Below are positions 27,684 to 63,784 of a DNA stretch of 64,000 nucleotides, in pieces. The stretch covers positions 124,001 through 188,000 of the IMG/VR virus record IMGVR_UViG_3300030419_008158, one strand, 5' to 3'. The stretch's first letter is position 1. Every line of letters starts with the position of its first letter. A model generated the notes under the pieces. It was not told the DNA's origin and did no database searches. It saw only the letters and a program-made list of their open reading frames with translations. The translations under genes were made by a program, and so were the position numbers.

Positions 27684-27697
27684 TTAGCCCTCCCAGA

Positions 27698-30955: not shown

Positions 30956-30970
30956 TTTATCTCTCCAATG

Positions 30971-44797: not shown

Positions 44798-44850
44798 ATT
44801 ACAAATCTCCAGCGCCATGGCATCTTATAAAACATAGGAAGACGATAAAA

Positions 44851-50527: not shown

Positions 50528-51316
50528 ATGAAAAAAAACTATATCAGTCTAATTCTATTACTAATGTGTCTTTTTTTCACACAATGTGGTGTACATGGAA
50601 AATACACAGGTCCCACTCCAGCAATTTACAAGCTTGTTGAAACCCAGACAGTACTTGTTGAAGTCACAAATACGATTACACCAACGCGGTGTGAAAATAA
50701 ATCTAATTTTGCAAAGAAAGAAGACCTTTGCTCAAAAGTTTTGCCCGAACTTCCACCCATACACGGATCACATGTGGGAACAGGAACATTTATCAAGTTG
50801 AACGATGAAATAGTTGTTTTGACTGCAGAGCATGTATGTGCCCCAGACGAAGTTCCGAAAAAAGTAGAAAAAGATGACGTAGTCGTTTATCCGACAATTG
50901 AAACAAAAATTGAAATTAAGTCGAGAATTTATACGGGTGTTGGCTCTGTGTTAAAAATGAGCAAACCTCTGGACATATGTGTTTTGTCGCTAGACGTCCA
51001 GCCTAATGTTTCTGTTCCTAACTTTTCAAGAAAACCACCCGAAAGAGGTGCTAGAATATACTACGCCGGAGCGCCGCAGGGGTTCATGTCGGATACTGCC
51101 CTAATGATGTTTGATGGAAGATATGCGGGAACCATGGGGAAAATGCTAGCATTTTCAATGCCCTGTGAGCACGGAACCTCAGGTGCCAGTGTTAGAAATA
51201 GTAAAAATCAAATATTTTCGATAGTGCAAAGAGTGAACGGTCAGTTCAAGCATATGTGTTACGGTGTTAGCACAGAAGAGATGATAAAATTCTTAAGTAC
51301 TATAAAGCCTAAGTAA
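50528..51316 (+). CDS. Secreted/lipoprotein trypsin-like serine protease
   Basis: Signal-like N-terminus ending FFTQC; LTAEHVC (His), DICVL (Asp), HGTSGA (Ser). Confidence 0.82.
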   Translation: MKKNYISLILLLMCLFFTQCGVHGKYTGPTPAIYKLVETQTVLVEVTNTITPTRCENKSNFAKKEDLCSKVLPELPPIHGSHVGTGTFIKLNDEIVVLTAEHVCAPDEVPKKVEKDDVVVYPTIETKIEIKSRIYTGVGSVLKMSKPLDICVLSLDVQPNVSVPNFSRKPPERGARIYYAGAPQGFMSDTALMMFDGRYAGTMGKMLAFSMPCEHGTSGASVRNSKNQIFSIVQRVNGQFKHMCYGVSTEEMIKFLSTIKPK

Positions 51317-51599
51317 TTTCTTTGGACGTAGAATTCATATAGTCAACTCGATGCTTGTCTATGATCATTCTTGCCATGTGCTTAGCGTCACTTTCTGATG
51401 CGTGTCTAGATGTGTGCATTAGTTTTTTATCCTTAAAAGAAATATCCATAAGGTAAGAACCGTCTGCTTGTGGGTAATATTCTATTTCGTAATCCTGAAA
51501 ATTGTCCCATGTATTGGGATCCGGATCAACTGTGTGATAGTTTCTTCCAATTTCTTCTAGAATAATCTCTCTAATTGTAGCCAAGAGAACTTTTTTCAT
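51309..51599 (-). CDS. Hypothetical protein with degenerate leader
   Basis: MKKVLLATIREIILEE N-terminus; TAATG overlap. Confidence 0.7.
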   Translation of the reverse strand: MKKVLLATIREIILEEIGRNYHTVDPDPNTWDNFQDYEIEYYPQADGSYLMDISFKDKKLMHTSRHASESDAKHMARMIIDKHRVDYMNSTSKEIT

Positions 51600-52048
51600 T
51601 ATGTACTCGCGACAAAGAGTTCAATGTCAACAGCCGAAGAGTCAGCTGATGCTTTCATTGATGTAAAATCTACAAAGCTGTCAAAAGCTGCACCAGCTGC
51701 ACTGCCCGAAACAGACGGGGATGTAAAGATCGCAGATCTTTTTGCAGGAAGTTTCATGTCGTATCGATTAAGGGCACCACTTACAAATGCTATTCTTACA
51801 AAATTTGTATCATCTAGGTTTGTAATTCTGACATACTGCAAGTTAGAAGTAACATAAGTTCCGGCTCCTGCCGACGAACTCAAAGCCAAGATTTCTGTTT
51901 CGTAGGTGGGTACTGTGAAAACACGTCGAGATGCTTCGTTGACATTGGGAATCGAATGAGTAACTCTACTTCCTACTTGATGTCCATTGAGCTTTACGTC
52001 TTCGTTGACTGTGACAGTCAGTGTTGCATCATCTATTGTTGTCGCCAT
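51599..52048 (-). CDS. Probable virion structural protein
   Basis: Thr/Ser/beta-rich, TLTVTVNE...YVRITNLDD pattern; family not confirmed. Confidence 0.55.
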   Translation of the reverse strand: MATTIDDATLTVTVNEDVKLNGHQVGSRVTHSIPNVNEASRRVFTVPTYETEILALSSSAGAGTYVTSNLQYVRITNLDDTNFVRIAFVSGALNRYDMKLPAKRSAIFTSPSVSGSAAGAAFDSFVDFTSMKASADSSAVDIELFVAST

Positions 52049-52268
52049 CTTTTATCTCCAAAATTTTTTCTAGAATTACTTCCAGCAGAGCTTCTGCTTC
52101 TTTGTCATCGGATTCCATTTCTATAGCAGCTATTTGCCCTTGTGCTCTTTTTTTAGATGTATGACAAGCAGAATGTTTTTTACCTTTTTTGTCTGTGTAT
52201 GAAAGTGTGTAACTACCACTGTCTCCATCTGCTTGTTTACACTTGTTTTTTCGAACTGTGTAGGGCAT
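52029..52268 (-). CDS. Small basic hypothetical protein
   Basis: GGAG SD; MPYTVRK...CHTSKKRAQGQIAAIE. Confidence 0.65.
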   Translation of the reverse strand: MPYTVRKNKCKQADGDSGSYTLSYTDKKGKKHSACHTSKKRAQGQIAAIEMESDDKEAEALLEVILEKILEIKDGDNNR

Positions 52269-52271
52269 GGT

Positions 52272-53561
52272 CTATGCTCCACCACTGCACGACTCAGTTG
52301 ATAGATCGCTATCGTCGACTTCTATAAACTTTTCACTCTCGTGCTCTTCATCATCTTCTCTCATTCCCGAAACTTTGCTAATCATATCAGGAATCGGACA
52401 ATCACCAACATCAACTTCAAGAAACTTTTTTGCAGTTGCAGCACGTGCCATGGGAGCTGTCATCGACTTGTGTACAACAGTTGCAGCTGCAATTTTCCCC
52501 GGGTCACTATTTTTTTCTGCTTCCAGCAAAACTTTTCTTATAATTTTTCTAAGAACAGATTCAGACAGCATAAGATTTCTTTTCATAGTTTTTGTCTCTC
52601 CAATTGTACAGCTATGTGTGGGCTGGGTTGGCAATTCTCCTTTGGAAAATTCGTAGTTATATATTTCCAGCTCAGTACCTTCTGCGTTCTCAGAAGCCTC
52701 ATTATCACAAAGTTGAGCAACTCTTCGAGCATTTTCTGGATCGTCATCATAAAAGTGTATGTTATCGATGGAAGGATTGTGAATCTTACCAATTAGATCT
52801 CTCTTCGCTGATGCAGGATCACTGGGATTGAAATCAGCTGCGCCATAGACGACGTCAGCATTCGATCCGATTTCTGACGCCAAAAAATCCTGTATATCAG
52901 ATGCGTTAGTTGCAGGAACTTTACCTCCACCTAGTGTATCTAGATCGGTCTTTCCTTTTCTTGCTGTAACAACAGCGGTCATGTCGCCTGATGCTTCAGC
53001 ATCTAGGAACACATCTAGCATACTGTCTATTGGTTCTACTTCTGTGCCAATTGTACTTGATGGACTAAAGTCAGCAATGTGTATTTCGCCTGTTTTACCC
53101 TGGTCAAACATCTCTCGCCCGGCGCTTCGAATATCGTTGCTTATGTTGGGATTTACAACCAAACGAACATGTTCACCAGAAGGTATATACTTTTCTTTCC
53201 AGTCTCTATACTGCTCTGTGTCTAGAACAATCGCTTCAGCGTCATCTAGTTCATCATTGCTTCTAACAGTATTTCCTGATAGCCCTGGAGAGTTTACGTT
53301 TTTTTGAGCCGGCGTGCTGAGGTTTTTTACTTTTGATCCCACACGCGAATTTAGATTTTTTATGGGAATATACGATGAAGGGTCATCAGGGTCTCCACCG
53401 TTATATTCGACAGCTGCGACAAGTGTCGGTGAGGTGGTTACACCCAAAGTATCATCGAAATCAAAGACATGCAAATCTCTCTCCGGACTTTTTACTTGAT
53501 CCTCGTCCTGTTCTTGTAAAATTCCAGCTAGTTTACACCATCGATTGATAACTGCATCCAT
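52272..53561 (-). CDS. HAD-family hydrolase with N-terminal RWxKLAG motif and internal leader module
   Basis: VFDFDDTL, VTAR, FYDDDPEN; MDAVINRWCKLAG start; internal MKRNLMLSESVLRKIIRKVLLE. Confidence 0.8.
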   Translation of the reverse strand: MDAVINRWCKLAGILQEQDEDQVKSPERDLHVFDFDDTLGVTTSPTLVAAVEYNGGDPDDPSSYIPIKNLNSRVGSKVKNLSTPAQKNVNSPGLSGNTVRSNDELDDAEAIVLDTEQYRDWKEKYIPSGEHVRLVVNPNISNDIRSAGREMFDQGKTGEIHIADFSPSSTIGTEVEPIDSMLDVFLDAEASGDMTAVVTARKGKTDLDTLGGGKVPATNASDIQDFLASEIGSNADVVYGAADFNPSDPASAKRDLIGKIHNPSIDNIHFYDDDPENARRVAQLCDNEASENAEGTELEIYNYEFSKGELPTQPTHSCTIGETKTMKRNLMLSESVLRKIIRKVLLEAEKNSDPGKIAAATVVHKSMTAPMARAATAKKFLEVDVGDCPIPDMISKVSGMREDDEEHESEKFIEVDDSDLSTESCSGGA

Positions 53562-53590
53562 GAATAATTCTCCGAGTCACTTATGTTTGC

Positions 53591-53598
53591 TAAATATC
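53591..53598 (-). promoter_or_regulatory. GATANTTA putative late-promoter motif
   Basis: GATATTTA 29 nt upstream of ATG 53561. Confidence 0.5.
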
Positions 53599-53770
53599 TC
53601 TCCGGAGATAAATTTGACACGGCGAACGAGAATTTATTTAGTGACAACTCTGTGAAAACAGACAGCAGCCAAAATAATCACGGTGAATCATTCGCTTCTT
53701 TTATGAGTGTTTCTATATATTGTCGCAAACAATGAACCAGAGAGCTTTTTAGCAGCCTCTGTGATCAATT

Positions 53771-54835
53771 CTATGAAAGCGTTCCTGCTAGCTTGTTCCA
53801 TCTTTCAAGAAGAATATTTCCGCTGTTTCTTGTTCGCGACTCAGTTTTAGTCTTATTACCCAAAGCGTTGCCGATGGCAGTCAAGAATTTAAGAGTCTTC
53901 TGGGGATCTCCTAAAGCTTGCAAGTTTACTTGCCCGGCAGTTCCCATTGAAGCAGATGGATCATTGAACATGGTGGCAGCCCATCGATGGTGACCATCAA
54001 GAATCTCTCCGTTGGTGCCTGCCCAGGCGTCTAGATCTCCACCTGCTATTTGATTTTTAGGGTTCATTGCCATACCCAAAGCTTTGTAAATAAGAATATT
54101 AGACTGTGTAGGAATAGCGTCAGAAGCATTAAGCGATCCCCCCGCTTTTATTTCGATCTTGTCGTCTGTGTCATCTCCGTCATCAAGACCTGCAGTCATA
54201 AACTCTTTTGCACCTGGCGCATCCATGCCGACAAATTTATTTGGCGGAGGGGGCTCACCACCTTTGAGGTTAGAACTTTCTTCTTTTTCCTCTTCTTGCT
54301 CCATGAGAGCGCGCGCGCCCACCTTCCATGCTGCCTCCTTGAACGGAGCAGTAACATCAATATTATAGTCTCCGCCCGGTGTAAGAGCGTCTTCAACGTC
54401 AGAAACTTCCCCCTTAGCATCTTCGGGCCCGGGTAAGAAAGGCATGACACTTTTTGGTAATCCAGTGGAAGGAATTTTGGAAGCTAATGTGTTTAGGCGC
54501 TTGACAAACGTTTCAGGGCCAATCTTTTCAATCCATTCCTTAGCTTGCGCACCGTTAGTTTCATACCACTCGCCTTTCGTAATAGCTACGATTGGTGCGT
54601 CATCATCCCCAGAAAGAAGTTGGTTTGCGATTTCAACAGCATCTACATCTTTTACATTCGTCGTCTTATCAACCGAGGTTCCCTTAGGAGCATCTCCAAT
54701 TTTTCCAGATGCTTCTTTTTTCTCCTGGCCTTCCTCTTCTTGCTCAAAAAGAATCTTACTTAATTTCGGCAATTGGCTTGATGTGTCTTCATTTATGACA
54801 TGTCTTACTATTCTTCTTAGGTCGCTTTTCTTCAT
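53771..54835 (-). CDS. ParB/Srx-like (DGHHR) protein with leader and C-terminal RWxKLAG
   Basis: MKKSDLRRIVRHVINE; IPTQ...ILDGHHRWAA; LLERWNKLAG. Confidence 0.7.
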   Translation of the reverse strand: MKKSDLRRIVRHVINEDTSSQLPKLSKILFEQEEEGQEKKEASGKIGDAPKGTSVDKTTNVKDVDAVEIANQLLSGDDDAPIVAITKGEWYETNGAQAKEWIEKIGPETFVKRLNTLASKIPSTGLPKSVMPFLPGPEDAKGEVSDVEDALTPGGDYNIDVTAPFKEAAWKVGARALMEQEEEKEESSNLKGGEPPPPNKFVGMDAPGAKEFMTAGLDDGDDTDDKIEIKAGGSLNASDAIPTQSNILIYKALGMAMNPKNQIAGGDLDAWAGTNGEILDGHHRWAATMFNDPSASMGTAGQVNLQALGDPQKTLKFLTAIGNALGNKTKTESRTRNSGNILLERWNKLAGTLS

Positions 54836-54866
54836 TTTTCTCCCTAGGGATTTACGTTGTGATGAC

Positions 54867-54874
54867 TAAGTATC
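54867..54874 (-). promoter_or_regulatory. GATANTTA putative late-promoter motif
   Basis: GATACTTA 31 nt upstream of ATG 54835. Confidence 0.5.
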
Positions 54875-54876
54875 TT

Positions 54877-56361
54877 CTAGTCCTGAAAAATTCCTGCCAG
54901 CTTTTGCCAGCGTTCAACAATCAAGTTATCTTTTTCTAGATTTGATTCTTTCTTAAAGGGCGGGACAACATTATACTCACCGGCAGGAAGCCCTTTTTCA
55001 ATTTTTGCCAAACCTGAGGAGCCTCCAATAGACTCGTGATCTAACTGCGGCATATCTTCTCTAGATTTTGGCGCGCCATCTAGCGGTTGAGGCAGAGATC
55101 CTAAATTTTCTCCCACTTTGCTGGCAATTGCTTTTCTGATGGGGTCGTTTTCAAATCCTGTTCCTGAGTCTGCCAAAGAGACAAACTCTTCATCTCCTGT
55201 TAGACCGGCCCACTCATTTATTTTAGGGTGCTTTCCGTCTGCAATTGACTTAATCATAGCATCATTCAGCAGCGGCCCCGGGGCCTTTTCATCAGTCTGC
55301 TTACCTTTGTTTGCGTCTATCATGGCAACAATTGCATCTTTGCTTTTTCCGATGATGTCAGTTGCTGCTCCACCTCCTTTTGATGGATGCTGTCCGCTAT
55401 CATTGACAGCGGCAACTGCAAGCTGCGCTGCTGCCAGCTTATCAGCCACACTCCCGGGAAAACCAAAATCTTTTGCATTTATCGATCCGTCCGGCGTAAT
55501 AGCAAAAACGCCCGACCAGCGATGATGTCCGTCCAAAACAGCATTTCCGGAAATAGATATCGCTCCTGGTGCACCAGAAGTCTTGCTGGTAATTGCACTT
55601 TCTAGAACTTTTGCACTTCCTAAAGGAAATGAAACAGATTGCATCAAATCAATGAACTGCTGCGTAGGTCCTAGACTGCTTACGCTCACAGGAGTAGCAC
55701 TCCCTACTGTAATCTTATCATCCGGCTCTGCACCGTCATCAGCTTCAGCAGCTTTGACAAGAACATCCTGAACACCCGGGTCTTTATTTCCTTGTGCATC
55801 CATGAATGCTCGAACCCCCTCAGGTCCTGCTTTATATGCTGTTTCAAGATCTTTTCCTGGATCGCCAGTGACCTCTGGAGATTCTTTTTCTTCTTTGTCT
55901 TCTTGTTCAAAAAGGTTTCTCATTTCTGAGAGAATTATTTTTCGCAAGTCTTTGCTGTCAATTTTCTTAGTAGGTTTTGTAAAACCCAATGCTTCAGAAA
56001 GTGTAATTTTTCCCATGAATTTATTCTCCATTCTTCTTCCCATACCCGACCTTGTTGGCAACTCAATGTCATACTCACCTGGCATTAAATCTTGAATTCT
56101 ACGTTCCATTTCAATGTATTCTAGGTCTTGTATCACTTGTTCTTCTCGGGCACGATTAACAGCAGCGTATTCTTCCCAAATTTCATCTACAGCGGATTCT
56201 GCCTCTTCCATTGTTTCGAACATTGGAATTTTAGGTCGACGACCGTACAATTCTTTGTACATGTCAGAATACATGCCACCCAAATCTTGCAACTTTTGAT
56301 CATACTCGGCGTCTGCTGTGTCTCTAGGGTGCAATTCTCTAATAAGTTTGCTCAGGTGCAT
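54877..56361 (-). CDS. ParB/Srx-like (DGHHR) protein with N-terminal extension, internal leader and C-terminal RWxKLAG
   Basis: Start moved to ATG 56361 (AAGGAG SD); DLRKIILSE; LGPTQ...VLDGHHRWSG; IVERWQKLAG. Confidence 0.7.
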   Translation of the reverse strand: MHLSKLIRELHPRDTADAEYDQKLQDLGGMYSDMYKELYGRRPKIPMFETMEEAESAVDEIWEEYAAVNRAREEQVIQDLEYIEMERRIQDLMPGEYDIELPTRSGMGRRMENKFMGKITLSEALGFTKPTKKIDSKDLRKIILSEMRNLFEQEDKEEKESPEVTGDPGKDLETAYKAGPEGVRAFMDAQGNKDPGVQDVLVKAAEADDGAEPDDKITVGSATPVSVSSLGPTQQFIDLMQSVSFPLGSAKVLESAITSKTSGAPGAISISGNAVLDGHHRWSGVFAITPDGSINAKDFGFPGSVADKLAAAQLAVAAVNDSGQHPSKGGGAATDIIGKSKDAIVAMIDANKGKQTDEKAPGPLLNDAMIKSIADGKHPKINEWAGLTGDEEFVSLADSGTGFENDPIRKAIASKVGENLGSLPQPLDGAPKSREDMPQLDHESIGGSSGLAKIEKGLPAGEYNVVPPFKKESNLEKDNLIVERWQKLAGIFQD

Positions 56362-56382
56362 GATTTTCTCCTTCACTAGCAG

Positions 56383-56390
56383 TAAATATC
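56383..56390 (-). promoter_or_regulatory. GATANTTA putative late-promoter motif
   Basis: GATATTTA 21 nt upstream of ATG 56361. Confidence 0.5.
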
Positions 56391-56405
56391 ATGCAAAGAA
56401 AAAAG

Positions 56406-58499
56406 CTACTCAGGATTGCAAATCTCAGAAAGAATTTGCATTAAAGAGCCGTACATTTGTGTAGCGTTGCTAGACAGTTGAAAATACTCACCTGAACATG
56501 TGGAAGCAATTTCATCCCACTCCCATGATTCGTTAGTAGAAAAAGTGTATATCTTGGTTTTGGGCGCACTGATACAAGCATTTTTTATCTGCTCTACAGA
56601 AATCTCAGGTATCATGTAGCTTTGCTCTTCTTCATCGCTGAACACGATAATGATTTTATCAGCAGTCGGTCTCCAGCCAATTGTAAACACGTCTTTTGGT
56701 GGGATTGACTCACCGACATCTGTGTCCCACTCTGTTGCACTCATATCCATGTTTGCACCAGAAGAAATATTATGCAAAGACAAGTATATTCCATCAAGAA
56801 GCATCTCACTTCCTGTGTTCATTCCGTCGCTTCCAAGCGCAGCAAATGCTGCTAGAAAGTCCGGAAAGGGTGCAATATCTGACACTAGAATTAATCTTTC
56901 TTCAAATTCTCCTGCAAGTTGTTTCGGACCAACAATAAGACCCCAGTGTAACTTATCTTCAAGGGAATAGTAGGCAGCAAATTGATTTAATGCAATTAGA
57001 ACAGCTTCGATTTCATCAATCATCGAGCCAGACCAATCGATAACAAAAAGAATATCAGTTTCTGGTACTTCTTTTCCCCAGTCAACTTGTCCATCACAGT
57101 CATCATCAATTCCGTTACATTCTTCCGGCTTGGGTAGTACTTGATCTGCGCACATATTATCGATAAAGATATTATCTGACGTGTATGAACCCCAGGATCC
57201 CATATTGCACGTCATATTGCCTGCTTCGCAGATTCCTATGCCTAAAGTACCCTCTGGGCCTGTGTAACAATCTGCAATAAGACCCTCATCAATAAGAGTG
57301 TTGCAGTTGTCATCAAAGTTATTACACTTCTCTTCATTTAGAGGCATACCGACCAAGGAGTCACAAGCTGGGTCTGAGCCGGGAGGATCAACTAGCCAGT
57401 GGCAAATAGCGTAGCAAGGTGATAGAACAATCTCTTCACACCCAGGATCATTACAAAGACATGTCTTATATCCCTGGCCGCACAAGAGTGGCGGCTCAAA
57501 ACAGGGTAGAAGCTTTCCAACGTCTTGCACTGTGCATAGACACTCTATTCCATCGTCTATCAAGCCGTTACAATCGTCATCAAACCCGTTGCAAATCTCA
57601 GGCATTGGTTGCTTGGCTGTGCAACCACTCCAGTTTCCTGCGACGCAGACTTTGACCCCGACACCACATGCCGTGCTACACTCTTCTATTAGCTCATCAT
57701 CAACAAACCCATTGCAATCATTGTCGATCCCGTCGCATTCTTCAGCCGGAACTGCTCCGCACTCATCGCATGCGTTTCTTTGACCTTCGTCAATTTCACC
57801 ATCACAGTCATTGTCTGCATAATCACAAATTTCTTCTTGAGGTATGGGCCCGTAACAGACAAAGACACCGTCTTCACATATGGCATTCCCAGGCCCACAC
57901 TCATTTTCACAGGGTTCCACACCGATATCTTCGTCTGTAAGGCTATCACAGTCATTATCTTGTCCGTCACAAATTTCTTCTGTGCAGTCTTGACAGTCTG
58001 AAAAGTAAAGCTTGCCCTTGTCACAAACAACGTTTTGTTTACCGAGGGACCCATCTTCCATTTCACAATACTGCCACCCATAATCTAATGTCTGTGCACC
58101 TGGAGGACACTCGTATGCTTCGTAACATTCTCCCATAAAAAGAATTTGAGGTGGATCACATTCGTTTATTCCTAGAGGTTTACAAGGAACGTCTGAATCG
58201 TGACAAAAGTTTAGAACGACCTGCTTCTTCTCCATTGTAGGTTCACCGAATACAGGTGGACAAAACCATTCTTGTGTTTCACAACACTGAGGTTTGCAGC
58301 TGCACCACATAAACTGATCCTCTATTGTGATAGTTGCACAGGGATCTACATCTTCGGGAGGTGTGTCTGGTGTGTCGACATTCCTGGGATCTGTATCTAT
58401 TACAACTTGTGTGCTAGAAACATCTACCGGACTGCCACGGTCGTCGGCACAACCAACAACAAATAATAACGTAAGCGCCAGTGAGACAATTTTATTCAT
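56406..58499 (-). CDS. Lipoprotein with six Cys/Asp-rich (MopE-like) repeats and a C-terminal vWA domain
   Basis: MNKIVSLALTLLFVVGC lipobox; 6 x E.C.G.D.DC.G..DE; DILFVIDWSGSM MIDAS; FSDEE. Confidence 0.82.
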   Translation of the reverse strand: MNKIVSLALTLLFVVGCADDRGSPVDVSSTQVVIDTDPRNVDTPDTPPEDVDPCATITIEDQFMWCSCKPQCCETQEWFCPPVFGEPTMEKKQVVLNFCHDSDVPCKPLGINECDPPQILFMGECYEAYECPPGAQTLDYGWQYCEMEDGSLGKQNVVCDKGKLYFSDCQDCTEEICDGQDNDCDSLTDEDIGVEPCENECGPGNAICEDGVFVCYGPIPQEEICDYADNDCDGEIDEGQRNACDECGAVPAEECDGIDNDCNGFVDDELIEECSTACGVGVKVCVAGNWSGCTAKQPMPEICNGFDDDCNGLIDDGIECLCTVQDVGKLLPCFEPPLLCGQGYKTCLCNDPGCEEIVLSPCYAICHWLVDPPGSDPACDSLVGMPLNEEKCNNFDDNCNTLIDEGLIADCYTGPEGTLGIGICEAGNMTCNMGSWGSYTSDNIFIDNMCADQVLPKPEECNGIDDDCDGQVDWGKEVPETDILFVIDWSGSMIDEIEAVLIALNQFAAYYSLEDKLHWGLIVGPKQLAGEFEERLILVSDIAPFPDFLAAFAALGSDGMNTGSEMLLDGIYLSLHNISSGANMDMSATEWDTDVGESIPPKDVFTIGWRPTADKIIIVFSDEEEQSYMIPEISVEQIKNACISAPKTKIYTFSTNESWEWDEIASTCSGEYFQLSSNATQMYGSLMQILSEICNPE

Positions 58500-58563
58500 G
58501 CTATGTTAAACATTATAAAATTGTCGAAACAGTAAAAAGAAAAATTATCTAATAGTCAAATGA

Positions 58564-59967
58564 TTACACTTTGATTCTATCAATTGTCTGTGGATAGCTT
58601 ACAGCAATATCTTTGTAAAGCTTCTTCATCACTGCTTTCGTAATATTTGCCAGCTCTTCTTTTGTTGCTTTGTTCTTAAGAATTTTCTCTACTTCTGTCT
58701 TGATGGTTTTTTGCAGATCTTTTCCAACAACTTTTGTAATTTCTTTTTGTGCTTCTTTTCTAGAAATCCTTTCGATTTCTTTCATGTCTGTTTTGGTAAA
58801 TTTTTCTACCAAAAGTATCTCTCTTACATGTCTTCTAAAGCGAAGCTCTTCTTGGATATAGCTTTGAGCAATTCGACTATATCCTGCTGCAAGCCTAAGC
58901 TTTTGTTCGGGAGGTTGTTCTCTAGACAACCCTAGTTTATCAATGATAAGGGAGATCACTTCTTGCATGTCATCTCTAGTCAGACCCCTAACATACGCTT
59001 TTACTTGCTGCATAAATTGTTTTCTGTCAGCCGGCTCAGCAAACGCTCGATCCTCAGACCCAACTGTTTTCATTAGATTTTTTGCAGTTTTTTCGAAAAG
59101 TTGATCCGGATCCATAACTTCCAAAGATGCTATTTGAGATCCTGCGCCCTCAGTTTGACCACCTTCAGAGTTTTGACCATCCGACCCTAAAATTATCTCC
59201 ATATTCTTCTTGTTTAGGCGCCCATCAGACATGCCAAGTTTTTTTACTAGCTGCTTCTTGACTGCTTTAATAAGATCGTCAGCATCAGCCGGCTTTTTTG
59301 TAAGAGCATCTAAAAGTCTGTTTCGAAGATTTTCTAAAGGTTTACCCTGGGTTATCTCTACGGGTTCTTGTGGAAGATGTTTTACGATATTGTTTACAAC
59401 TCCCTCTCTGCTGATTGGTGCAGTCACGTGCCCCCAACGAATTATAACATTTTCGTCGTTTCCAGTTTTTATGACCCCGATATTACCTAGCATTTTCTTA
59501 TCAGGTTCTTTTATGATAAGTGCAAGAATAGATTCAATTTTTGGCGAGGAGCTTGATGTGGCTGCAGAAAAATTATCGTCTGCACGATATGAAGAAAAAG
59601 AAGACTTGACAGAATAGTAAACACCGTCCTTATCAGCATCATAAAAAGTTGTGACACCTGCACTACCTTGATCTTCTACACCAAAACCCCAAAACTGGAG
59701 CATTTTTTCGGCAATTGACTGCCACGCATTTTTATTCCCGCTCTCAGTCGCAACAGAGTGAACTAATTCATTGAATACCAGAACCTCTGAAAGCAGCTTA
59801 TCAGCGTCACCAGCTCGGGCAATATTCTCAGCGTATTTTGGTATATTGATATCGTATGCTACTGGAATATCAACACTGACACTCCCAGCAGCGCCTGCAT
59901 CCATTTTCAATACTTTTTCGGATAAGATTACATTTCTTATCCAAGACTTTAAGAGCCTCTTTTTCAT
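58564..59967 (-). CDS. Hypothetical protein with leader-like N-terminus and internal leader-like module
   Basis: Start moved to 59967 (MKKRLLKSWIRNVILSE); late segment LRFRRHVREILLVE. Confidence 0.7.
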   Translation of the reverse strand: MKKRLLKSWIRNVILSEKVLKMDAGAAGSVSVDIPVAYDINIPKYAENIARAGDADKLLSEVLVFNELVHSVATESGNKNAWQSIAEKMLQFWGFGVEDQGSAGVTTFYDADKDGVYYSVKSSFSSYRADDNFSAATSSSSPKIESILALIIKEPDKKMLGNIGVIKTGNDENVIIRWGHVTAPISREGVVNNIVKHLPQEPVEITQGKPLENLRNRLLDALTKKPADADDLIKAVKKQLVKKLGMSDGRLNKKNMEIILGSDGQNSEGGQTEGAGSQIASLEVMDPDQLFEKTAKNLMKTVGSEDRAFAEPADRKQFMQQVKAYVRGLTRDDMQEVISLIIDKLGLSREQPPEQKLRLAAGYSRIAQSYIQEELRFRRHVREILLVEKFTKTDMKEIERISRKEAQKEITKVVGKDLQKTIKTEVEKILKNKATKEELANITKAVMKKLYKDIAVSYPQTIDRIKV

Positions 59968-59968
59968 T

Positions 59969-60565
59969 TTAGAAAAGCTCTTCATTTTTTGGGTCATGCT
60001 TGACCAGAATCTTCTTCATAACAGCAACTTGTTTATCTGACATGCGTCTGCCGGATTTCATTTGATCTGCGAGGCTTTGCAAGAAATTATTGGTCTTAAC
60101 AGACAGGTAATCTTCGATAGCTGCTAATTGTTTCCCTCTTACAGAGCCGGCCATTGGAGGTATATTTTTTCTTCGCCTCCATGGCGGACTAGTCCCGAGA
60201 TAAGTCTCACCACCATATTTTTGACCAAAGGCTGCACCTCTGCGCGATACGTTACCTTCATCATCGTAGATATTACCCTCGGCGTCGACGTATTGTTCGT
60301 ATTCCAGCAGCATTAATTCACGACGAACAATGCGTCGAAGTTCATTCTCAGAAAGAAGTGGTTCTTGAGCTGGAAGAGACTCCGGAGATTTTGTAGTAGC
60401 TTCAGACCCTACAGCCTTTGAGTGATCTATGTCTAACTCTAGATTTTTTGCTGTACCCTCAATGTCTCCGGACCACGCATCTTCAACGGGCTCCACATCA
60501 GAAGGGTGTTCTTCATCTAGCATTTCTAAGATAATTTTTTTGAGCTGCTTTTTTGTAATTTTCAC
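59969..60565 (-). CDS. Leader-bearing multi-module hypothetical protein
   Basis: GTG start at 60565 with GGAG SD (MKITKKQLKKIILE); second LSENELRRIVRRELMLLE module. Confidence 0.75.
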   Translation of the reverse strand: MKITKKQLKKIILEMLDEEHPSDVEPVEDAWSGDIEGTAKNLELDIDHSKAVGSEATTKSPESLPAQEPLLSENELRRIVRRELMLLEYEQYVDAEGNIYDDEGNVSRRGAAFGQKYGGETYLGTSPPWRRRKNIPPMAGSVRGKQLAAIEDYLSVKTNNFLQSLADQMKSGRRMSDKQVAVMKKILVKHDPKNEELF

Positions 60566-60581
60566 TTTAGAATCTCCATTC

Positions 60582-60920
60582 TTAAATAAAGGCACCTAGT
60601 TCTATTTCGGTTGCTCTGTCTTCTGCCCACTCCTCTATGTCGAGTGGACCGATAAAGCCGTTCTGCGGGGGTGTGTAGTCAAGCCATGTTCGATTCGGGG
60701 CACCGGCGCGCTGTGCTAGGTCGTCTAGATCTTCAAATCCAAGACCTCTCTGGTCCAGCCACTCTCCCCAACCATGCATGAGCTTCTCGTCCGTTTTTTG
60801 TTCACCCTCCCCACCGGGTGCATAGTAATCTTCTTCACCGGGAGGAGCAGAGAAATCTCTATCATCATCGGCCCATGCTTCCCTGATGATTCGCCTGAGC
60901 TGTCGCTTAGTGATTCTCAT
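60582..60920 (-). CDS. Leader-bearing hypothetical protein
   Basis: MRITKRQLRRIIRE followed by an acidic body. Confidence 0.8.
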   Translation of the reverse strand: MRITKRQLRRIIREAWADDDRDFSAPPGEEDYYAPGGEGEQKTDEKLMHGWGEWLDQRGLGFEDLDDLAQRAGAPNRTWLDYTPPQNGFIGPLDIEEWAEDRATEIELGAFI

Positions 60921-60924
60921 ATGA

Positions 60925-61149
60925 TCATCTGCCTCTGCGCAAGACTTTAACAGTTACGCCCTTGACATCACCGGTCATAATATAAAGTTCGCCGGGTGCA
61001 TCACCTTTTTCAACAGTTGCCACCCCTTTGTTTATTCTATTCTGTAAATCAGCTGCCAATCTTTCTGGAGTCTCCTCCAGATCAGGTAAGTGACTTGCAT
61101 CTAGCATTTCCTGAATGATTTGTTTTAGCTTTTTCTTTGAGATTTTCAT
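60925..61149 (-). CDS. Leader-bearing hypothetical protein
   Basis: Start moved to 61149 (TAATG overlap); MKISKKKLKQIIQE. Confidence 0.8.
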   Translation of the reverse strand: MKISKKKLKQIIQEMLDASHLPDLEETPERLAADLQNRINKGVATVEKGDAPGELYIMTGDVKGVTVKVLRRGR

Positions 61150-61412
61150 TATCTCATCCTCTGAATTTTTTCTAACATTAGATTCTTGCATTCTCTCTTG
61201 ATTCCGGGTGAGCGAAAGCTGCCACCAATACGCACAGCCTCGCTGATACAATGCTGGATCAGTTCGTCGATGGACATTTCAACATGTGCTAAGAGGTCTG
61301 ATCTTGCTTCATCTTCATCAGCAGAGATTGTGCCATCAGGATTCATTTCATTGAGAATCTTGACTTTCTCTTCTTTAATAATTCTTCTGAGTTGCTTCTT
61401 TGTGATTTTCAT
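61149..61412 (-). CDS. Leader-bearing hypothetical protein
   Basis: MKITKKQLRRIIKEE; GGGAG SD. Confidence 0.8.
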   Translation of the reverse strand: MKITKKQLRRIIKEEKVKILNEMNPDGTISADEDEARSDLLAHVEMSIDELIQHCISEAVRIGGSFRSPGIKRECKNLMLEKIQRMR

Positions 61413-61414
61413 TG

Positions 61415-62140
61415 TTATCTCCCGCTAACCTTTCTATACATCGCCTTATGAAGAGAATTAACCATAGGTTCAAGGTCTGTCCCGTACAACACAGGCATAA
61501 CCCTGTCTTCAAGATCATAAATGGCTTGTTGTATTTTTGCGTTATTTTGAAGTTCGTATTGCTCTGCGTTGGCGTCTTCTTGTAGCTCTTCTTTGATAAT
61601 TCTTCTGAGTTGTCGTTTTGTGATCTTCATTCTGTTTTTTCCTTCAATCTTATATTCGTCGCGACCTACTTCAAAATCTTCATCATCTGGCTCTTCGATG
61701 CCAGCGGCTATAGCCTTTTTGTTTTCTACATCCGCTACGGGGGAATCATCAGCGACGTAACCCACACCAGTATTACTTGCAGGTGAAACGTCGTATGGAG
61801 GTTTCGGTGCCGGATTCTTACTGAGTGACGGGTGTCCGGCATAGAGGCTCCAGTCGATTGGCTCGTCGACAGGCACCTCTACTTTTGGGCCGAACCTTTG
61901 ATTATCCGGATGGTAGTTATCCTCCGCGACGCCTCGGGCCGCCTGGTCAGCGGTTTGAAACATATGATTTAGAGACCCAACTCCCATAAACGGCCGGCCC
62001 TGCGCCTTGCCCAGCCAGTCGGTGGCCGCTTGTTTTGACCCCTTTGCCGGCCAGAATGGTGCGTGCTTATCTCGCCTCTCGAGAAGACGGGCCTTCTCTT
62101 CTTTGATGATTCTTCTGAGTTGTCGCTTTGAGATTCTCAT
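61415..62140 (-). CDS. Leader-bearing hypothetical protein with a second complete internal leader
   Basis: MRISKRQLRRIIKEE; in-frame MKITKRQLRRIIKEE from ATG 61630. Confidence 0.8.
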   Translation of the reverse strand: MRISKRQLRRIIKEEKARLLERRDKHAPFWPAKGSKQAATDWLGKAQGRPFMGVGSLNHMFQTADQAARGVAEDNYHPDNQRFGPKVEVPVDEPIDWSLYAGHPSLSKNPAPKPPYDVSPASNTGVGYVADDSPVADVENKKAIAAGIEEPDDEDFEVGRDEYKIEGKNRMKITKRQLRRIIKEELQEDANAEQYELQNNAKIQQAIYDLEDRVMPVLYGTDLEPMVNSLHKAMYRKVSGR

Positions 62141-62143
62141 TAT

Positions 62144-62344
62144 CTATGCTTCTGCCTCTATAGTACCTTGTTCATATCCAGCATCATACGCCTGTGGATA
62201 TGTTGAGCGATCAGCATCGTTTGGATACCCCTGATAAGCATCATCATACCCGCGATCGTACTCTTGATCTTCATCCCTGTTGGGGCTCATCATTCTAATC
62301 TCTTCCTTGATGATCCTTCGCAGTTGTCGCTTGGTGATTCTCAC
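62144..62344 (-). CDS. Leader-bearing small acidic protein
   Basis: GTG start with GAGGA SD; MRITKRQLRRIIKEE; YDxGY repeats. Confidence 0.78.
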   Translation of the reverse strand: MRITKRQLRRIIKEEIRMMSPNRDEDQEYDRGYDDAYQGYPNDADRSTYPQAYDAGYEQGTIEAEA

Positions 62345-62357
62345 GGTTTATCCTCTT

Positions 62358-62966
62358 TTAAGCTCTAAAGGCATCTCGAACATAGTCGGTTGCGTAGTCA
62401 ACGGCAGATTCCTTTTCGCCCTCAGACTCGGCGTACTCAATATTAGCAAGGGCATCGAGTGCCTCATCAACCTCAAACCCCGTACCCAAGTTTCGAACCA
62501 TGTCTTCCAATTGAGCCAATGTTGCTGAATCGTTAGGGTTTCGTGATAGCTTGCTCAGCAGATCACTAGCTTGATCGTAAGTTGCTCGGCCACCAGATCG
62601 ATTGTCGTCTACTACGTCCTGCACAAATGCGATCATTTGGTCAATAGGTTGTGATGGAGTATCAGAGTCTTCTTCGGAAACTGTGTGATAGCCTGCAGCT
62701 TTAAGAGTGTTTAGCGACTGCAACTGTGCTTCAACACCGTCACGGGGCACCGGGCCGCCACCAAACTGCCTAGCAACATCATCATCGGTCATTGCGACGT
62801 TATTTCCGTCTAGATACCAAAAACCCTGTGCTAAATCAGCATGACCCTTTTTGTCCATCTGCTCCATCAATCTTCTGCGCACAATTCTACGAATCTTCTG
62901 CTCAGCCAGAACTTTGGCTTTCTCTTCTTTGATGATTTGTCTTAGTTGTCGCTTGGAGATTTTCAT
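62358..62966 (-). CDS. Hypothetical protein with extended double leader
   Basis: MKISKRQLRQIIKEEKAKVLAEQKIRRIVRRRLMEQ; AAGGA SD. Confidence 0.8.
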   Translation of the reverse strand: MKISKRQLRQIIKEEKAKVLAEQKIRRIVRRRLMEQMDKKGHADLAQGFWYLDGNNVAMTDDDVARQFGGGPVPRDGVEAQLQSLNTLKAAGYHTVSEEDSDTPSQPIDQMIAFVQDVVDDNRSGGRATYDQASDLLSKLSRNPNDSATLAQLEDMVRNLGTGFEVDEALDALANIEYAESEGEKESAVDYATDYVRDAFRA

Positions 62967-62981
62967 GTTGTTTTTTCCTTC

Positions 62982-63371
62982 TTACGTCATCTCGACAAAT
63001 TCGTCAAAGTCACCAGCTGCGTAAGGATCACCCCCTGCATACCAGTTGACAAACCAGTCCTTGAGCATTCCAACATCACCCGCGACGTCGAGCATGCTGT
63101 ACCCGCTTGGGCCGGTCCCCCTGTCTGTAAATCTCAGACCACGATATCGGGGGTTTCTTGTCATCTGCTTGAATGGACCACTCTCATCACGTATTTCCCC
63201 GTGTTCGTCCATCATGTCTAGGCCTCGAATTATTCCCTGTTGACCGGTTGGCTCAGCTGGTCCTCGCATCTTGATAGCTTGTTCAGCGATACGACGGACC
63301 TTCTGTTCAGCCAGGACCTTGGCTTTCTCTTCTTTGATAATTCTTCGAAGCTGTTTCTTTGTGATTCTCAT
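62982..63371 (-). CDS. Hypothetical protein with extended double leader
   Basis: Start moved to 63371 (TAATG); MRITKKQLRRIIKEEKAKVLAEQKVRRIAEQ. Confidence 0.8.
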   Translation of the reverse strand: MRITKKQLRRIIKEEKAKVLAEQKVRRIAEQAIKMRGPAEPTGQQGIIRGLDMMDEHGEIRDESGPFKQMTRNPRYRGLRFTDRGTGPSGYSMLDVAGDVGMLKDWFVNWYAGGDPYAAGDFDEFVEMT

Positions 63372-63784
63372 TAGAAAAAAGCTCCTATTATGTTTAGCCA
63401 TGTGTCAAGGGTAAATCTGTCGCCGGCATCTGGGTCCATTTCGTCCGCAAGCTCATCGTCCCTGACATGCGTTACACCGTATGTGGATCTAAGCCAGTTG
63501 GCCAGCGCGACATGATCAGCCTTTGAGTCCAGATCTCCTTCCCACCAGACTGTCTTAATGCCTGGCTTGAGCTCAGGATGTGAGTCTGGGTATTGAATTA
63601 CAATACCGGAATTTTCAAGAGTACCAAGGCCGCTGGGAGGCGATCTGTAGTCTATCACTAGTGTTTCACCACCAGCCTGCTCCAATAGTTTCCTGCGGAC
63701 AATTCGACGGACCTTCTGCTCAGCCAGAACTTTGGTCTTCTCTTCTTTGACTATTCTTCTAAGTTGTCTTTTTGTGATTTTCAT
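63371..63784 (-). CDS. Hypothetical protein with extended double leader
   Basis: Start moved to 63784 (AAGGA SD); MKITKRQLRRIVKEEKTKVLAEQKVRRIVRRKLLEQ. Confidence 0.8.
   Translation of the reverse strand: MKITKRQLRRIVKEEKTKVLAEQKVRRIVRRKLLEQAGGETLVIDYRSPPSGLGTLENSGIVIQYPDSHPELKPGIKTVWWEGDLDSKADHVALANWLRSTYGVTHVRDDELADEMDPDAGDRFTLDTWLNIIGAFF

What the first reader, a model, noticed from the sequence alone, without database searches (positions are those of the whole stretch)
51309..63784. Array of unrelated proteins sharing a capsid-targeting-like leader: a candidate large virion cargo-loading system
Seen: eight consecutive genes (starts 63784, 63371, 62966, 62344, 62140, 61412, 61149, 60920) plus the GTG start at 60565 begin M[KR]I[TS]K[RK][QK]L[RK][RKQ]I[IV]xE, then continue into unrelated bodies. 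Degenerate versions head 59967, 54835 and 51599. Each leader is a basic amphipathic helix ending in I/L-x-E (IKE, IRE, ILE, LAE, LLE, LNE, LSE, INE). The three most upstream genes carry a doubled form (...IIKEEKAKVLAEQKxRRI..). Established: T4 internal proteins (IPI-III) carry an N-terminal capsid-targeting sequence removed by the gp21 protease after I/L-x-E, and are injected with the DNA. Inference: this is an analogous but much larger tag-and-cleave system that loads a dozen or more cargo proteins into the head. An alternative is a scaffold-binding or DNA-binding helix.
Basis: partly seen in the sequence, partly recalled or inferred. Interest (0 to 1): 0.85.

Follow-up and report, generated by a model that had tools for sequence, protein, structure and literature searches.

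The report
Shared leader tags jumbo-phage proteins
An uncultured marine jumbo phage puts the same 15-residue N-terminal helix on dozens of otherwise unrelated small proteins; the tag also heads a gene beside the phage's T4-type head protease, so it most likely addresses these proteins to the forming phage head, which has not been shown directly.

Summary
The core observation is real. Ten copies of M-[KR]-I-[ST]-K-[RK]-Q-L-[RK]-x-I-[IV]-x-E lie on the minus strand at 60562-63784, against 0 expected. Nine are at gene starts. The "degenerate" leaders at 59967, 54835 and 51599 score as noise.

Conservation is at the peptide level, because synonymous codons vary freely. The window belongs to a 284-kb IMG/VR contig with at least 29 leader genes. 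An exhaustive profile search finds 10,240 protein clusters worldwide. None is in Pfam, PHROGs, cultured phages or the searched literature.

The protein bodies are short, acidic, cysteine-poor and almost all without known relatives.

The window's own genome has a T4-type head module, outside the window: portal, a gp21-family prohead protease, scaffold and a gp23-like capsid protein. The gene two places after that protease begins MAKITKRMLKGIVKEC. This matches the leader profile (hhalign E 7e-7). The leader always ends I/V-x-E, and this protease family cuts after Glu.

Best reading (about 0.55): a prohead-core targeting leader on a very large cargo repertoire. It is analogous to the T4 capsid-targeting sequence but not homologous to it. 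Packaging and cleavage are untested. The ClpP-like gene in the window is probably not the head protease.

The parts
63371..63784 (-). Leader gene 1, 137 aa. Carries the doubled leader: a 15-aa core plus a second basic helix unit ending L-L-E.
   Evidence: Leader HMM 40.3 bits. Second-unit HMM 41.4 bits. 100% match to IMG/VR contig 3300030419_008158.
62982..63371 (-). Leader gene 2, 129 aa. Doubled leader with a truncated second unit. The body has no relatives among the fetched loci.
   Evidence: Leader HMM 39.4 bits. Second unit 28.3 bits. Body is a singleton cluster.
62358..62966 (-). Leader gene 3, 202 aa. Doubled leader, with a body built from two modules that are shuffled among relatives.
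   Evidence: Leader HMM 39.6 bits. 108 database hits, most sharing only the leader. Module shuffling seen in alignment A4. AlphaFold2: helix 5-38, linker, then a folded body.
62144..62344 (-). Leader gene 4, 66 aa, GTG start. Acidic body with G-Y repeats.
   Evidence: Leader HMM 36.2 bits. Sequence.
61415..62140 (-). Leader gene 5, 241 aa. A read-through fusion of two cassettes. A second complete leader starts at 61630 with its own Shine-Dalgarno-like sequence and ATG.
   Evidence: Leader HMM 36.1 bits at 62140 and 42.4 bits at 61630. Upstream sequence GAAGGAAAAAACAGA-ATG. The same pattern is seen worldwide.
61149..61412 (-). Leader gene 6, 87 aa. Its body family recurs in 7 fetched loci.
   Evidence: Leader HMM 39.9 bits. 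Body cluster of 7.
60925..61149 (-). Leader gene 7, 74 aa. Its start overlaps the stop codon of gene 6.
   Evidence: Leader HMM 24.4 bits. Coordinates.
60582..60920 (-). Leader gene 8, 112 aa. Strongly acidic body (pI 4.05).
   Evidence: Leader HMM 42.3 bits. Charge.
59969..60565 (-). Leader gene 9, 198 aa, GTG start. Also carries an internal copy of the second helix unit near residue 85.
   Evidence: Leader HMM 23.4 bits. Internal second-unit hit 14.7 bits, E 8.5e-4.
49439..50125 (-). ClpP-like serine protease. It is probably NOT the prohead protease of this phage.
   Evidence: Pfam CLP_protease 3e-26 and PHROG head maturation protease 2e-38. In relatives it sits among helicase and PrkA genes, or among GroEL, sigma-factor and deformylase genes. 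A gp21-family protease lies in the head module of the same contig.

Best explanation
The 15-residue N-terminal helix, with or without a second helix unit, is a protein-level address tag. It docks a large and fast-turning-over repertoire of small acidic accessory proteins into the scaffolding core of the assembling prohead. At least 29 genes carry it in this 284-kb phage genome, and there are more than 10,000 such protein families in the ocean.

On this reading the proteins are packaged with the DNA and delivered to the next host cell. The tag is probably removed after its invariant Glu (I/V-x-E) by the phage's gp21-family prohead protease, as happens to the capsid-targeting sequence of T4 internal proteins.

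Shown here: the tag, its strict N-terminal position, selection at the peptide level, its scale, the T4-type head module, and a head-module gene carrying the tag.

Inferred: the destination (the head), the cleavage, and the injection.
For: 1. Peptide-level selection. Identity between leader copies is 0.79-0.85 at codon positions 1 and 2 but 0.57-0.64 at position 3. The same codon is used for the same residue only 56-59% of the time, and Leu8 uses six codons.

2. The tag belongs at the N-terminus. 354 of 361 copies sit on a start codon. Internal copies keep Met or Val in about 85% of cases and are preceded by an in-frame reading of a Shine-Dalgarno sequence, so they are fused cassettes.

3. Unrelated cargo. 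289 proteins fall into 156 body clusters, 103 of them singletons. Only 6 of 298 have any Pfam hit.

4. Conservation stops at a Glu. Glu14 is invariant in 299 of 299 copies and [ILVM]-x-E occurs in 99.7%. In doubled leaders E22 and E35 are also invariant.

5. The window's own contig has a T4-type head module (L372): portal (32% to T4 gp20), a gp21-family protease (34% to T4 gp21, E 3e-20) and scaffold. Its closest relative, contig 3300025141_000025 (L345), and the leader-array contig L347 add a gp23-like capsid protein. This protease family cuts after Glu in T4, phiKZ, 201phi2-1 and SPN3US (PMC5694885).

6. The gene two places downstream of that protease, in the stretch between protease and scaffold, begins with the tag (T4 places its core genes 67 and 68 just upstream of gene 21). 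hhalign against the leader profile gives probability 91.9%, E 7e-7 and 55% identity for the window-genome protein. The family alignment gives probability 92.2%, E 6e-7. The protease lies upstream of this gene, with one gene between where the ORFs were mapped, in 76 of 80 loci.

7. Precedent. T4 internal proteins are diverse defence-countering proteins that share only a capsid-targeting sequence, which docks them to the scaffolding core (PMC3012670; PMC5694885).

8. Weak support. The bodies are 5.6-fold depleted in Cys. In 9 of 71 loci, arrays sit inside the late tail operon between the tube and hub genes.
Against: - There is no direct evidence that any tagged protein is in virions or is cleaved.
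- The function of the tagged head-module gene is itself unknown. Only its position suggests a core protein.
- The similarity rests on about 22 residues, and single-sequence HMM scores for that family are low (-4 to +10 bits).
- The bodies are acidic (median pI 4.55), whereas mature T4 internal proteins are basic (pI 9.0-9.7). The leader is basic, unlike the T4 leader.
- Most arrays lie among replication, repair, chaperone and metabolic genes, not next to head genes. T4 ip genes also lie outside the head cluster.
- One body is RMF-like and one is an EF-hand, both cytoplasmic-type domains.
- Twenty-nine or more cargo species per virion is far beyond T4.
Confidence: 0.55

Rival explanations
1. 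The helix is a docking tag for an intracellular proteostasis hub. This lineage encodes chaperones and proteases (DnaK/DnaJ, GroEL, ClpP, a MoxR-VWA pair). The tag would recruit chaperones to, or time the degradation of, early host-takeover proteins that never enter the virion.
For: Neighbours of the arrays include Hsp70, DnaJ, Cpn60, ClpP and peptide deformylase. A MoxR-like ATPase and a VWA-metallopeptidase pair lie just upstream of the window's array. A hydrophobic core flanked by basic residues resembles the known DnaK-binding pattern (own knowledge, not tested). Most arrays lie in non-structural regions.
Against: It does not explain why a conserved gene inside the head module, two places after the prohead protease, carries the tag. 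It does not explain the invariant terminal Glu. No partner has been identified.
Confidence: 0.15
2. The helix is an arginine-rich nucleic-acid-binding peptide. It would tether acidic effector domains to DNA, RNA or ribosomes in the infected cell, or to the packaged genome without any specific head-core docking.
For: The leader carries a net charge of about +4 over 15 residues, with a broad basic face. Doubled leaders are more basic still. One body is a ribosome modulation factor domain.
Against: Nucleic-acid-binding helices need not be at the extreme N-terminus, yet 354 of 361 copies are. The residues conserved most strongly are the hydrophobic stripe and Glu14, not only the basic ones. Attaching acidic bodies to a DNA-binding peptide would weaken binding.
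Confidence: 0.1
3. The tag addresses proteins to another phage-built destination, for example an intracellular compartment or a non-classical export route, rather than to the head.
For: A short conserved N-terminal peptide on unrelated proteins is the signature of a sorting signal in general. Jumbo phages of other lineages build compartments (PMC7824862).
Against: No compartment-shell or export genes were seen in about 2 Mb of fetched sequence, although no targeted search was made. The bodies have no hydrophobic signal or transmembrane segments. The only conserved non-array gene found with the tag is in the head module.
Confidence: 0.08
4. The conserved 45 bases act at the DNA or RNA level, as a recombination site for cassette shuffling or as a translation-initiation enhancer. 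On this view the peptide is incidental.
For: Arrays are hypervariable in number and content. Bodies are shuffled at the leader boundary and cassettes fuse. Shared leaders could promote illegitimate or homologous exchange as a side effect.
Against: Synonymous sites vary freely while the amino acids are kept. Sequence upstream of the Shine-Dalgarno region is unconserved. The peptide is conserved across more than 10,000 clusters.
Confidence: 0.03

Closest known systems
T4 capsid-targeting sequence (CTS) on internal proteins IPI, IPII, IPIII and Alt
   Same: A short N-terminal leader shared by otherwise unrelated small proteins. It ends in I/L-x-E. The phage has a gp21-family protease and a T4-type portal, scaffold and capsid module. 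The genes lie outside the head cluster, and the bodies are diverse as expected of counter-defence cargo.
   Different: - No sequence homology: the leader HMM scores -1.3 bits on T4 ipII.
- The leader here is basic and 15-36 residues long. T4's is 10-19 residues and not basic.
- Bodies are acidic here and basic in T4.
- At least 29 genes per genome here, against 3 ip genes in T4 (Alt also carries a CTS).
- Packaging and cleavage are proven in T4 and untested here.
T4 prohead core proteins gp67 and gp68
   Same: Small proteins encoded beside the head protease. Two conserved small genes in this lineage, of about 140 and about 90 residues, sit between the protease and the scaffold. The first carries the leader. 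The second has a related helix followed by a very acidic tail, as in gp67.
   Different: Similarity to gp67 is limited to the pentapeptide IKEEK (2.8 bits, not significant). The 90-residue family matches the leader only weakly (hhalign probability 13%, E 2e-3).
N-terminal propeptides of head and ejection proteins in giant phages SPN3US, phiKZ and 201phi2-1
   Same: Jumbo myophages with about 50 head proteins. A gp21-family protease removes N-terminal propeptides after Glu. Two paralogous ejection proteins share an identical 15-residue N-terminus that has been likened to a CTS (PMC5694885; PMC10052503).
   Different: The motif there is A-x-E or S/A/G-x-E, against I/V-x-E here. Most propeptides there are 111-254 residues long. 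Only a few proteins are processed there. No lineage-wide common tag on dozens of unrelated small proteins has been described.
Cargo-loading peptides of encapsulins and encapsulation peptides of bacterial microcompartments
   Same: Works in the same way in principle: a short amphipathic helix, joined by a flexible linker, is sufficient to load unrelated proteins into a protein shell (own knowledge).
   Different: Unrelated shells and sequences. Those peptides are not removed, and the cargo is not delivered to another cell.
Phage P1 Dar anti-restriction proteins, and polymorphic toxins with conserved N-terminal trafficking domains (for example MuF-associated)
   Same: Counter-defence or effector proteins are incorporated into phage heads and delivered with the DNA. 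The architecture is a conserved N-terminal delivery part with variable C-terminal parts (PMC9024508 and PMC12810830, listed and not read in detail; own knowledge).
   Different: Those systems use large proteins or whole domains for incorporation, not a 15-residue tag. There is no sequence relation.

Membership tests
T4-type CTS-bearing internal (injected) head proteins | A short N-terminal leader shared by otherwise unrelated small proteins | tested here: met
   10 copies in the window and 454 in fetched loci. 156 unrelated body clusters.
T4-type CTS-bearing internal (injected) head proteins | The leader ends at the protease recognition motif, a hydrophobic residue, any residue, then Glu | tested here: met
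   Glu14 in 299 of 299 copies and [ILVM]-x-E in 99.7%. This is a sequence motif only, not cleavage.
T4-type CTS-bearing internal (injected) head proteins | The genome encodes a gp21-family (Glu-specific) prohead protease within a T4-type head module | tested here: met
   L372, from the window's own contig: protease 34% identical to T4 gp21 (E 3e-20), flanked by a gp20-like portal and a scaffold. The same module is present in other leader-array contigs.
T4-type CTS-bearing internal (injected) head proteins | Sequence homology of the leader to the T4 CTS | tested here: not met
   The leader HMM scores -1.3 bits on T4 ipII and gives no hit on ipI or ipIII. The resemblance is analogy, not family membership.
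T4-type CTS-bearing internal (injected) head proteins | Mature proteins are basic and DNA-associated | tested here: not met
   Median body pI is 4.55, against 9.0-9.7 for mature T4 IPs.
T4-type CTS-bearing internal (injected) head proteins | Presence in virions, removal of the leader, and injection into the host | not testable with these tools
   Needs virion proteomics or an isolate. No cultured phage carries the leader.
Prohead core proteins of a T4-type head (gp67/gp68-like) | Encoded inside the head module next to the prohead protease | tested here: met
   This holds for the conserved leader-bearing family of about 140 residues (two genes downstream of the protease in the ORF maps; protease upstream in 76 of 80 loci; window genome). 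It does not hold for the array genes themselves.
Prohead core proteins of a T4-type head (gp67/gp68-like) | Sequence homology to T4 gp67 or gp68 | tested here: not met
   phmmer E 0.2-0.6 and leader HMM 2.8 bits on gp67.
ClpP-type prohead protease (for the window gene 49439-50125) | ClpP fold | tested here: met
   Pfam CLP_protease 3e-26 and phrog_94 2e-38.
ClpP-type prohead protease (for the window gene 49439-50125) | Encoded in the head module beside the portal and capsid genes, as the only head protease | tested here: not met
   It is flanked by a helicase and the PrkA operon, or by GroEL, sigma-factor and deformylase genes. The head module has its own gp21-family protease.

The most novel reading that the evidence does not exclude
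A cosmopolitan lineage of marine jumbo phages uses one universal 'zip code' helix to load dozens of different, rapidly exchanged effector proteins into each virion. If so, the 10,240 or more tagged protein families form a ready-labelled catalogue of proteins injected into marine bacteria at the first moment of infection. The 15-residue tag would also be a portable packaging signal for this head type.
Probability: 0.45. Interest if true: 0.9.

Novelty: new variant of a known kind. Interest (0 to 1): 0.8.

Why it matters
Short sorting signals that mark unrelated proteins for one destination are rare in phages. The T4 capsid-targeting sequence is the textbook case and covers a handful of proteins.

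Here the same logic appears with an unrelated sequence and at a scale about ten times larger per genome. It occurs in an abundant, uncultured ocean phage lineage whose accessory genes are otherwise unreadable.

If the head-targeting reading holds, three things follow:
- Thousands of proteins with no known relatives become a defined functional class, namely injected early effectors, probably for counter-defence or host takeover.
- The result gives a simple sequence rule for finding them in metagenomes.
- The tag becomes a candidate for loading foreign proteins into large capsids.

Even if the destination proves different, a family of more than 10,000 members with one conserved tag, absent from Pfam and PHROGs, is worth a family definition.

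Tried and rejected
1. Nucleotide-level repeat or regulatory element. Rejected because synonymous sites vary and upstream sequence is unconserved.

2. Promoter and terminator scan of 49-64 kb. No enrichment over shuffles.

3. Degenerate leaders on the larger downstream genes (59967, 54835, 51599, and internal LRKII-like motifs). Profile scores are at noise level. The exception is one internal second-unit hit in the 59969-60565 protein.

4. Function from the bodies. Searches with Pfam, PHROGs, the ESM Atlas, AlphaFold2 plus Foldseek (viral library) and tblastn against cultured phages gave essentially nothing.

5. The ClpP-like gene as the head protease. Its context argues against this, and a gp21-family protease exists elsewhere in the genome.

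6. Tail-operon location as evidence for late expression. Only 9 of 71 tube-hub junctions hold leader genes. The junction is a general insertion hot spot, so I downgraded this evidence.

7. Homology to T4 gp67 through the shared IKEEK. Not significant.

8. Host identification from bacterial genomes. There were only three hits, all in metagenome bins that look like mis-binned phage contigs.

9. Literature. No paper holds the leader peptide strings. The marine jumbo-phage survey and the jumbo-phage comparative review do not mention the leader.
Full report
**1. What is in the window**

All long ORFs in the window lie on the minus strand except one trypsin-like gene at 50528-51316. Between 59969 and 63784 there are nine tightly packed genes. 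Each begins M-[KR]-I-[ST]-K-[RK]-[QK]-L-[RK]-x-I-[IV]-x-E.

I built a profile from leaders found on other contigs only, so it is independent of the window. It hits exactly ten sites in the window at 23-42 bits, all in this stretch. The next best score in all six frames is 6 bits. A degenerate DNA pattern gives 10 matches against 0.00 expected in 100 shuffles.

The tenth copy starts at 61630, in frame inside ORF 61415-62140. It has its own purine-rich ribosome-binding sequence and ATG.

The supposed degenerate leaders at 51599 and 54835 score 3.5 and 2.4 bits, which is noise, and 59967 is not detected. The internal LRKII-like motifs of the larger downstream proteins are also noise. The one exception is a second-unit match inside the 59969-60565 protein (14.7 bits). 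The array in the window is therefore 59969-63784.

**2. Conservation is at the peptide level**

Among leader copies, identity is 0.79-0.85 at codon positions 1 and 2 but only 0.57-0.64 at position 3. When two copies encode the same residue they use the same codon only 56-59% of the time, and Leu8 uses all six codons. Sequence upstream of the Shine-Dalgarno region is unconserved. The selected object is the peptide, not a DNA or RNA element.

**3. Scale**

- The window is part of IMG/VR contig IMGVR_UViG_3300030419_008158, 284,429 bp.
- On that contig the profile finds 11 copies in the locus that extends the window (L066), 15 in a second array (L040) and 3 in a third (L027). That is at least 29 in total.
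- A degenerate DNA scan of IMG/VR returned 62 stretches on contigs up to 293 kb. Other contigs carry 23-34 copies in the pieces fetched.
- An exhaustive profile search of 1.84 billion representative proteins finds 10,240 clusters at E up to 0.001.
- A word-indexed search returned 108 proteins, most of them sharing only the leader. The doubled 36-residue form is 80-95% identical between them. Where a source name exists, nearly all are from Tara Oceans material.
- Nothing matches in Pfam or PHROGs, in 50,697 cultured-phage records, or in full-text searches for twelve leader peptide strings.

**4. Anatomy of the family**

- *Position.* Of 361 copies in fetched DNA, 354 sit on a start codon.
- *Conservation profile.* Conservation is near-total for residues 1-15, weaker to residue 22 (K-A-[RK]-L-L-x-E), and then absent. 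In copies found by the profile in the global library, Glu14 is invariant (299 of 299) and [ILVM]-x-E at 12-14 occurs in 99.7%. In doubled leaders, E22 and E35 are also invariant, and the variable body starts right after E35.
- *Bodies.* Median protein length is 102 residues. The 289 proteins form 156 clusters at BLASTP 1e-5, 103 of them singletons. Bodies are acidic: median pI is 4.55, and 69% are below pI 5, against 26% of neighbouring genes. Cysteine is 0.16%, against 0.90% in neighbours. None has a transmembrane-like segment.
- *Known domains.* Only 6 of 298 scanned proteins hit any Pfam family. These include one ribosome modulation factor domain and one EF-hand.
- *Shuffling.* Bodies are themselves built from shuffled modules.
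- *Structure.* AlphaFold2 models the 62358-62966 protein as one helix (residues 5-38), a low-confidence linker and a folded body. Foldseek finds no viral match.

**5. Internal copies**

About 8% of copies in my sample are internal, and at least 276 global clusters are strong enough to need two or more copies. In the 150 best global hits, internal copies begin with Met or Val in about 85% of cases. They are preceded by E-[GSN]-K. That tripeptide is the in-frame reading of the purine-rich ribosome-binding sequence seen upstream of free-standing leader genes. Internal copies are therefore read-through fusions of neighbouring cassettes that keep their own translation start. They are not a separate architecture.

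**6. The phage and its head module**

Neighbours of the arrays include ribonucleotide reductase, RecA, ThyX, UvdE, Hsp70/DnaJ, GroEL, a sigma factor, peptide deformylase, ClpP and tail sheath. This is a large contractile-tailed phage.

The tail tube is a distant T4 gp19 homologue. The tube, hub and a 149-residue window protein have homologues in the cultured Flavobacterium phage vB_FspM_immuto. That phage has an annotated T4-type head module: Gp20 portal, prohead core serine protease and Gp23 capsid protein.

I used the immuto and T4 proteins as local queries on loci fetched around a head-completion homologue. The same module turned up on contigs that also carry leader arrays and the ClpP gene. 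Its order is:

1. portal
2. a gene of about 280 residues
3. a gp21-family protease (29% identical to T4 gp21, E 1e-18)
4. five small genes
5. a scaffold of 505-588 residues
6. a gp23-like capsid protein
7. a gp24-like protein
8. head completion

**7. A head-module gene carries the tag**

The second small gene after the protease, about 140 residues long, begins M-A-K-[VLMI]-[ST]-[RK]-x-x-L-K-x-[LI]-[VI]-K-E-C. In some members this reads MKITKTQLKNLVKEC.

- Profile-profile comparison of the leader alignment with this family gives probability 92.2% and E 5.9e-7, aligning N-terminus to N-terminus.
- The family occurs on at least 453 IMG/VR contigs. In 76 of 80 fetched loci the protease lies upstream of it; in the loci whose ORFs were mapped one small gene lies between them.
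- The next gene, about 90 residues, has a related helix (…L-L-R-K-L-V-x-E-E-K-x-K-I…) followed by a very acidic tail. This recalls T4 gp67, but the statistical match to the leader is weak (probability 13%, E 2e-3). The shared IKEEK with gp67 is not significant.

**8. The window's own genome**

A degenerate DNA scan for the conserved V-K-E-C-L-[VF]-E-I-L stretch fetched L372, which comes from the window's own contig. On its minus strand it encodes, in order:

1. a terminase-like protein of 532 residues
2. a portal (32% to T4 gp20, E 1e-27)
3. a 274-residue protein
4. a gp21-family protease (34% to T4 gp21, E 2.7e-20)
5. a 134-residue protein
6. the tagged gene, beginning MAKITKRMLKGIVKEC
7. the acidic-tail gene
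8. two more small genes
9. the start of the scaffold

That single tagged protein matches the leader profile with probability 91.9%, E 7e-7 and 55% identity over residues 3-24.

**9. Interpretation**

In T4, the prohead core contains the scaffold gp22, the internal proteins, Alt, gp67, gp68 and gp21. The internal proteins join the core through a 10-20-residue N-terminal capsid-targeting sequence. gp21 then removes this sequence after a Glu (PMC5694885). T-even internal proteins are otherwise a diverse set of counter-defence proteins (PMC3012670). All characterised gp21-family proteases cut after Glu. In SPN3US the motif is A-x-E, and short propeptides of 20-24 residues occur.

The system found here has the same parts:

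- a T4-type head module with that protease family
- a tag that always ends hydrophobic-x-Glu
- a conserved head-module gene with the tag
- a large set of unrelated tagged proteins

I therefore rank prohead-core targeting, with probable removal of the tag, as the best explanation at about 0.55.

**10. What argues against it, and what is not shown**

- No tool here can show virion presence, cleavage or injection.
- The tagged head-module gene has no known function.
- The leader is basic and the bodies acidic, the reverse of T4. T4 leaders read MKTYQEFIAE, and mature T4 IPs have pI 9.0-9.7.
- There is no sequence homology to the T4 leader.
- Most arrays lie among non-structural genes. T4 ip genes also lie outside the head cluster, next to denV, e and tRNA genes.
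- Arrays inserted between the tail tube and hub genes looked like evidence for late expression. They occur in only 9 of 71 such junctions, and that junction is a general insertion hot spot.

The rivals are a proteostasis-hub tag, a nucleic-acid-binding helix, another sorting destination, and a DNA-level role. They are given with their tests in the rival section.

**11. The ClpP-like gene**

The ClpP-like gene at 49439-50125 is conserved in the lineage. It sits either in the block 149-residue protein, 96-residue protein, trypsin-like gene, 148-residue protein, ClpP, helicase, SpoVR, YeaH, PrkA, or beside GroEL, sigma-factor and deformylase genes. Its nearest cultured relatives are ClpP-type head proteases of small siphophages, at only 29-35% identity. 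The head module has its own gp21-family protease, so the ClpP-like gene is more likely an auxiliary proteostasis gene.

**12. Verdict**

It is a new variant of a known kind: T4-like capsid targeting with an unrelated tag, reversed charge logic and much greater scale. It lies in an uncultured, widespread marine jumbo-phage lineage.

Noticed in passing
window 42866-47321 (minus strand): A complete PrkA (YeaG) - YeaH (DUF444) - SpoVR operon, normally a bacterial stress or sporulation-related trio, is carried by the phage. It is 72-92% conserved in relatives.
   Followed up: partly
window 278-26016 (minus strand): About 26 kb of glycan-biosynthesis genes: GDP-mannose 4,6-dehydratase, epimerases, several GT1, GT2 and GT4 glycosyltransferases, a carbamoyltransferase and a radical SAM enzyme. 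A PD-(D/E)XK nuclease lies among them.
   Followed up: partly
window 26238-38041 (minus strand): Three very large genes of 481, 1085 and 2356 residues. The largest ends in an endosialidase-type tail-spike domain. G+C jumps to 45-46% here, against about 37% in the flanks.
   Followed up: no
window 56406-58499 (minus strand): A 697-residue predicted lipoprotein with repeated cysteine-rich MopE-type metal-binding motifs and a weak VWA match at the C-terminus. It is 62% conserved in a relative.
   Followed up: no
window 50528-51316 (plus strand): The only long plus-strand gene in the window: a trypsin-like peptidase with an N-terminal lipoprotein-like signal. It is present at the same place in two relatives (L070, L076) and absent in a third (L074).
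   Followed up: partly
window 52272-56376 (minus strand): Three consecutive large proteins share a second short motif, E-R-W-x-K-L-A-G, at their extreme C-termini (two proteins) or N-terminus (one). Two of them are weak paralogues with a ParB/sulfiredoxin-like L-D-G-H-H-R-W motif. The third has a HAD-like F-D-F-D-D-T-L motif.
   Followed up: partly
L066:303-6921 (just beyond the window end, same contig): Upstream of the array lie an HD-domain (SpoT-like) protein, a VWA/HExxH metallopeptidase-like protein, a MoxR-like AAA+ ATPase and a KaiC/RadA-like ATPase. Two genes there have leader-like but sub-threshold N-termini (MKISKEMIREIV.., MSATRGLLRNIVREC..).
   Followed up: no
L086-L164 (tail modules of the lineage): The junction between the tail tube and 'baseplate hub' genes is an insertion hot spot. 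It is usually 90-270 bp. In other loci it holds leader arrays, an extra sheath-like gene of 1100-1230 residues, or zinc-finger/endonuclease-like genes. Two tandem sheath paralogues of more than 1000 residues are common.
   Followed up: partly
L170:5469-6986, L181:4842-6332 (scaffold homologues): In some relatives the scaffold protein begins M-S-T-x-L-Y-[KR]-E-A-I-A-E-A-Q. This closely resembles the T4 gp22 N-terminus (…Q-L-I-A-E-A-Q) and the T4 capsid-targeting sequence (…Y-Q-E-F-I-A-E-A). The window genome's scaffold start differs.
   Followed up: no
L005, L067, L068, L069, L078-L082: Contigs of this phage lineage have been binned as giant-virus MAGs (GVMAG) or as bacterial MAGs (Methylococcaceae TMED69, 306-kb contig; Peribacter; Verrucomicrobiales). 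These are probably mis-binned phage sequence.
   Followed up: no
window 62144-62344; L024:1454-1717: Some leader proteins have bodies with G-Y-x-x-G repeats. One of them reaches significance against the ribosome modulation factor family (E 6e-6), which hints at ribosome-directed cargo.
   Followed up: partly
window 51599-52048 (minus strand): A 149-residue beta-sandwich protein conserved in many tailed-phage clusters (Atlas TM 0.9). In the cultured Flavobacterium phage its homologue lies in the structural region between PhoH and a head-completion gene. It is probably a virion protein.
   Followed up: partly
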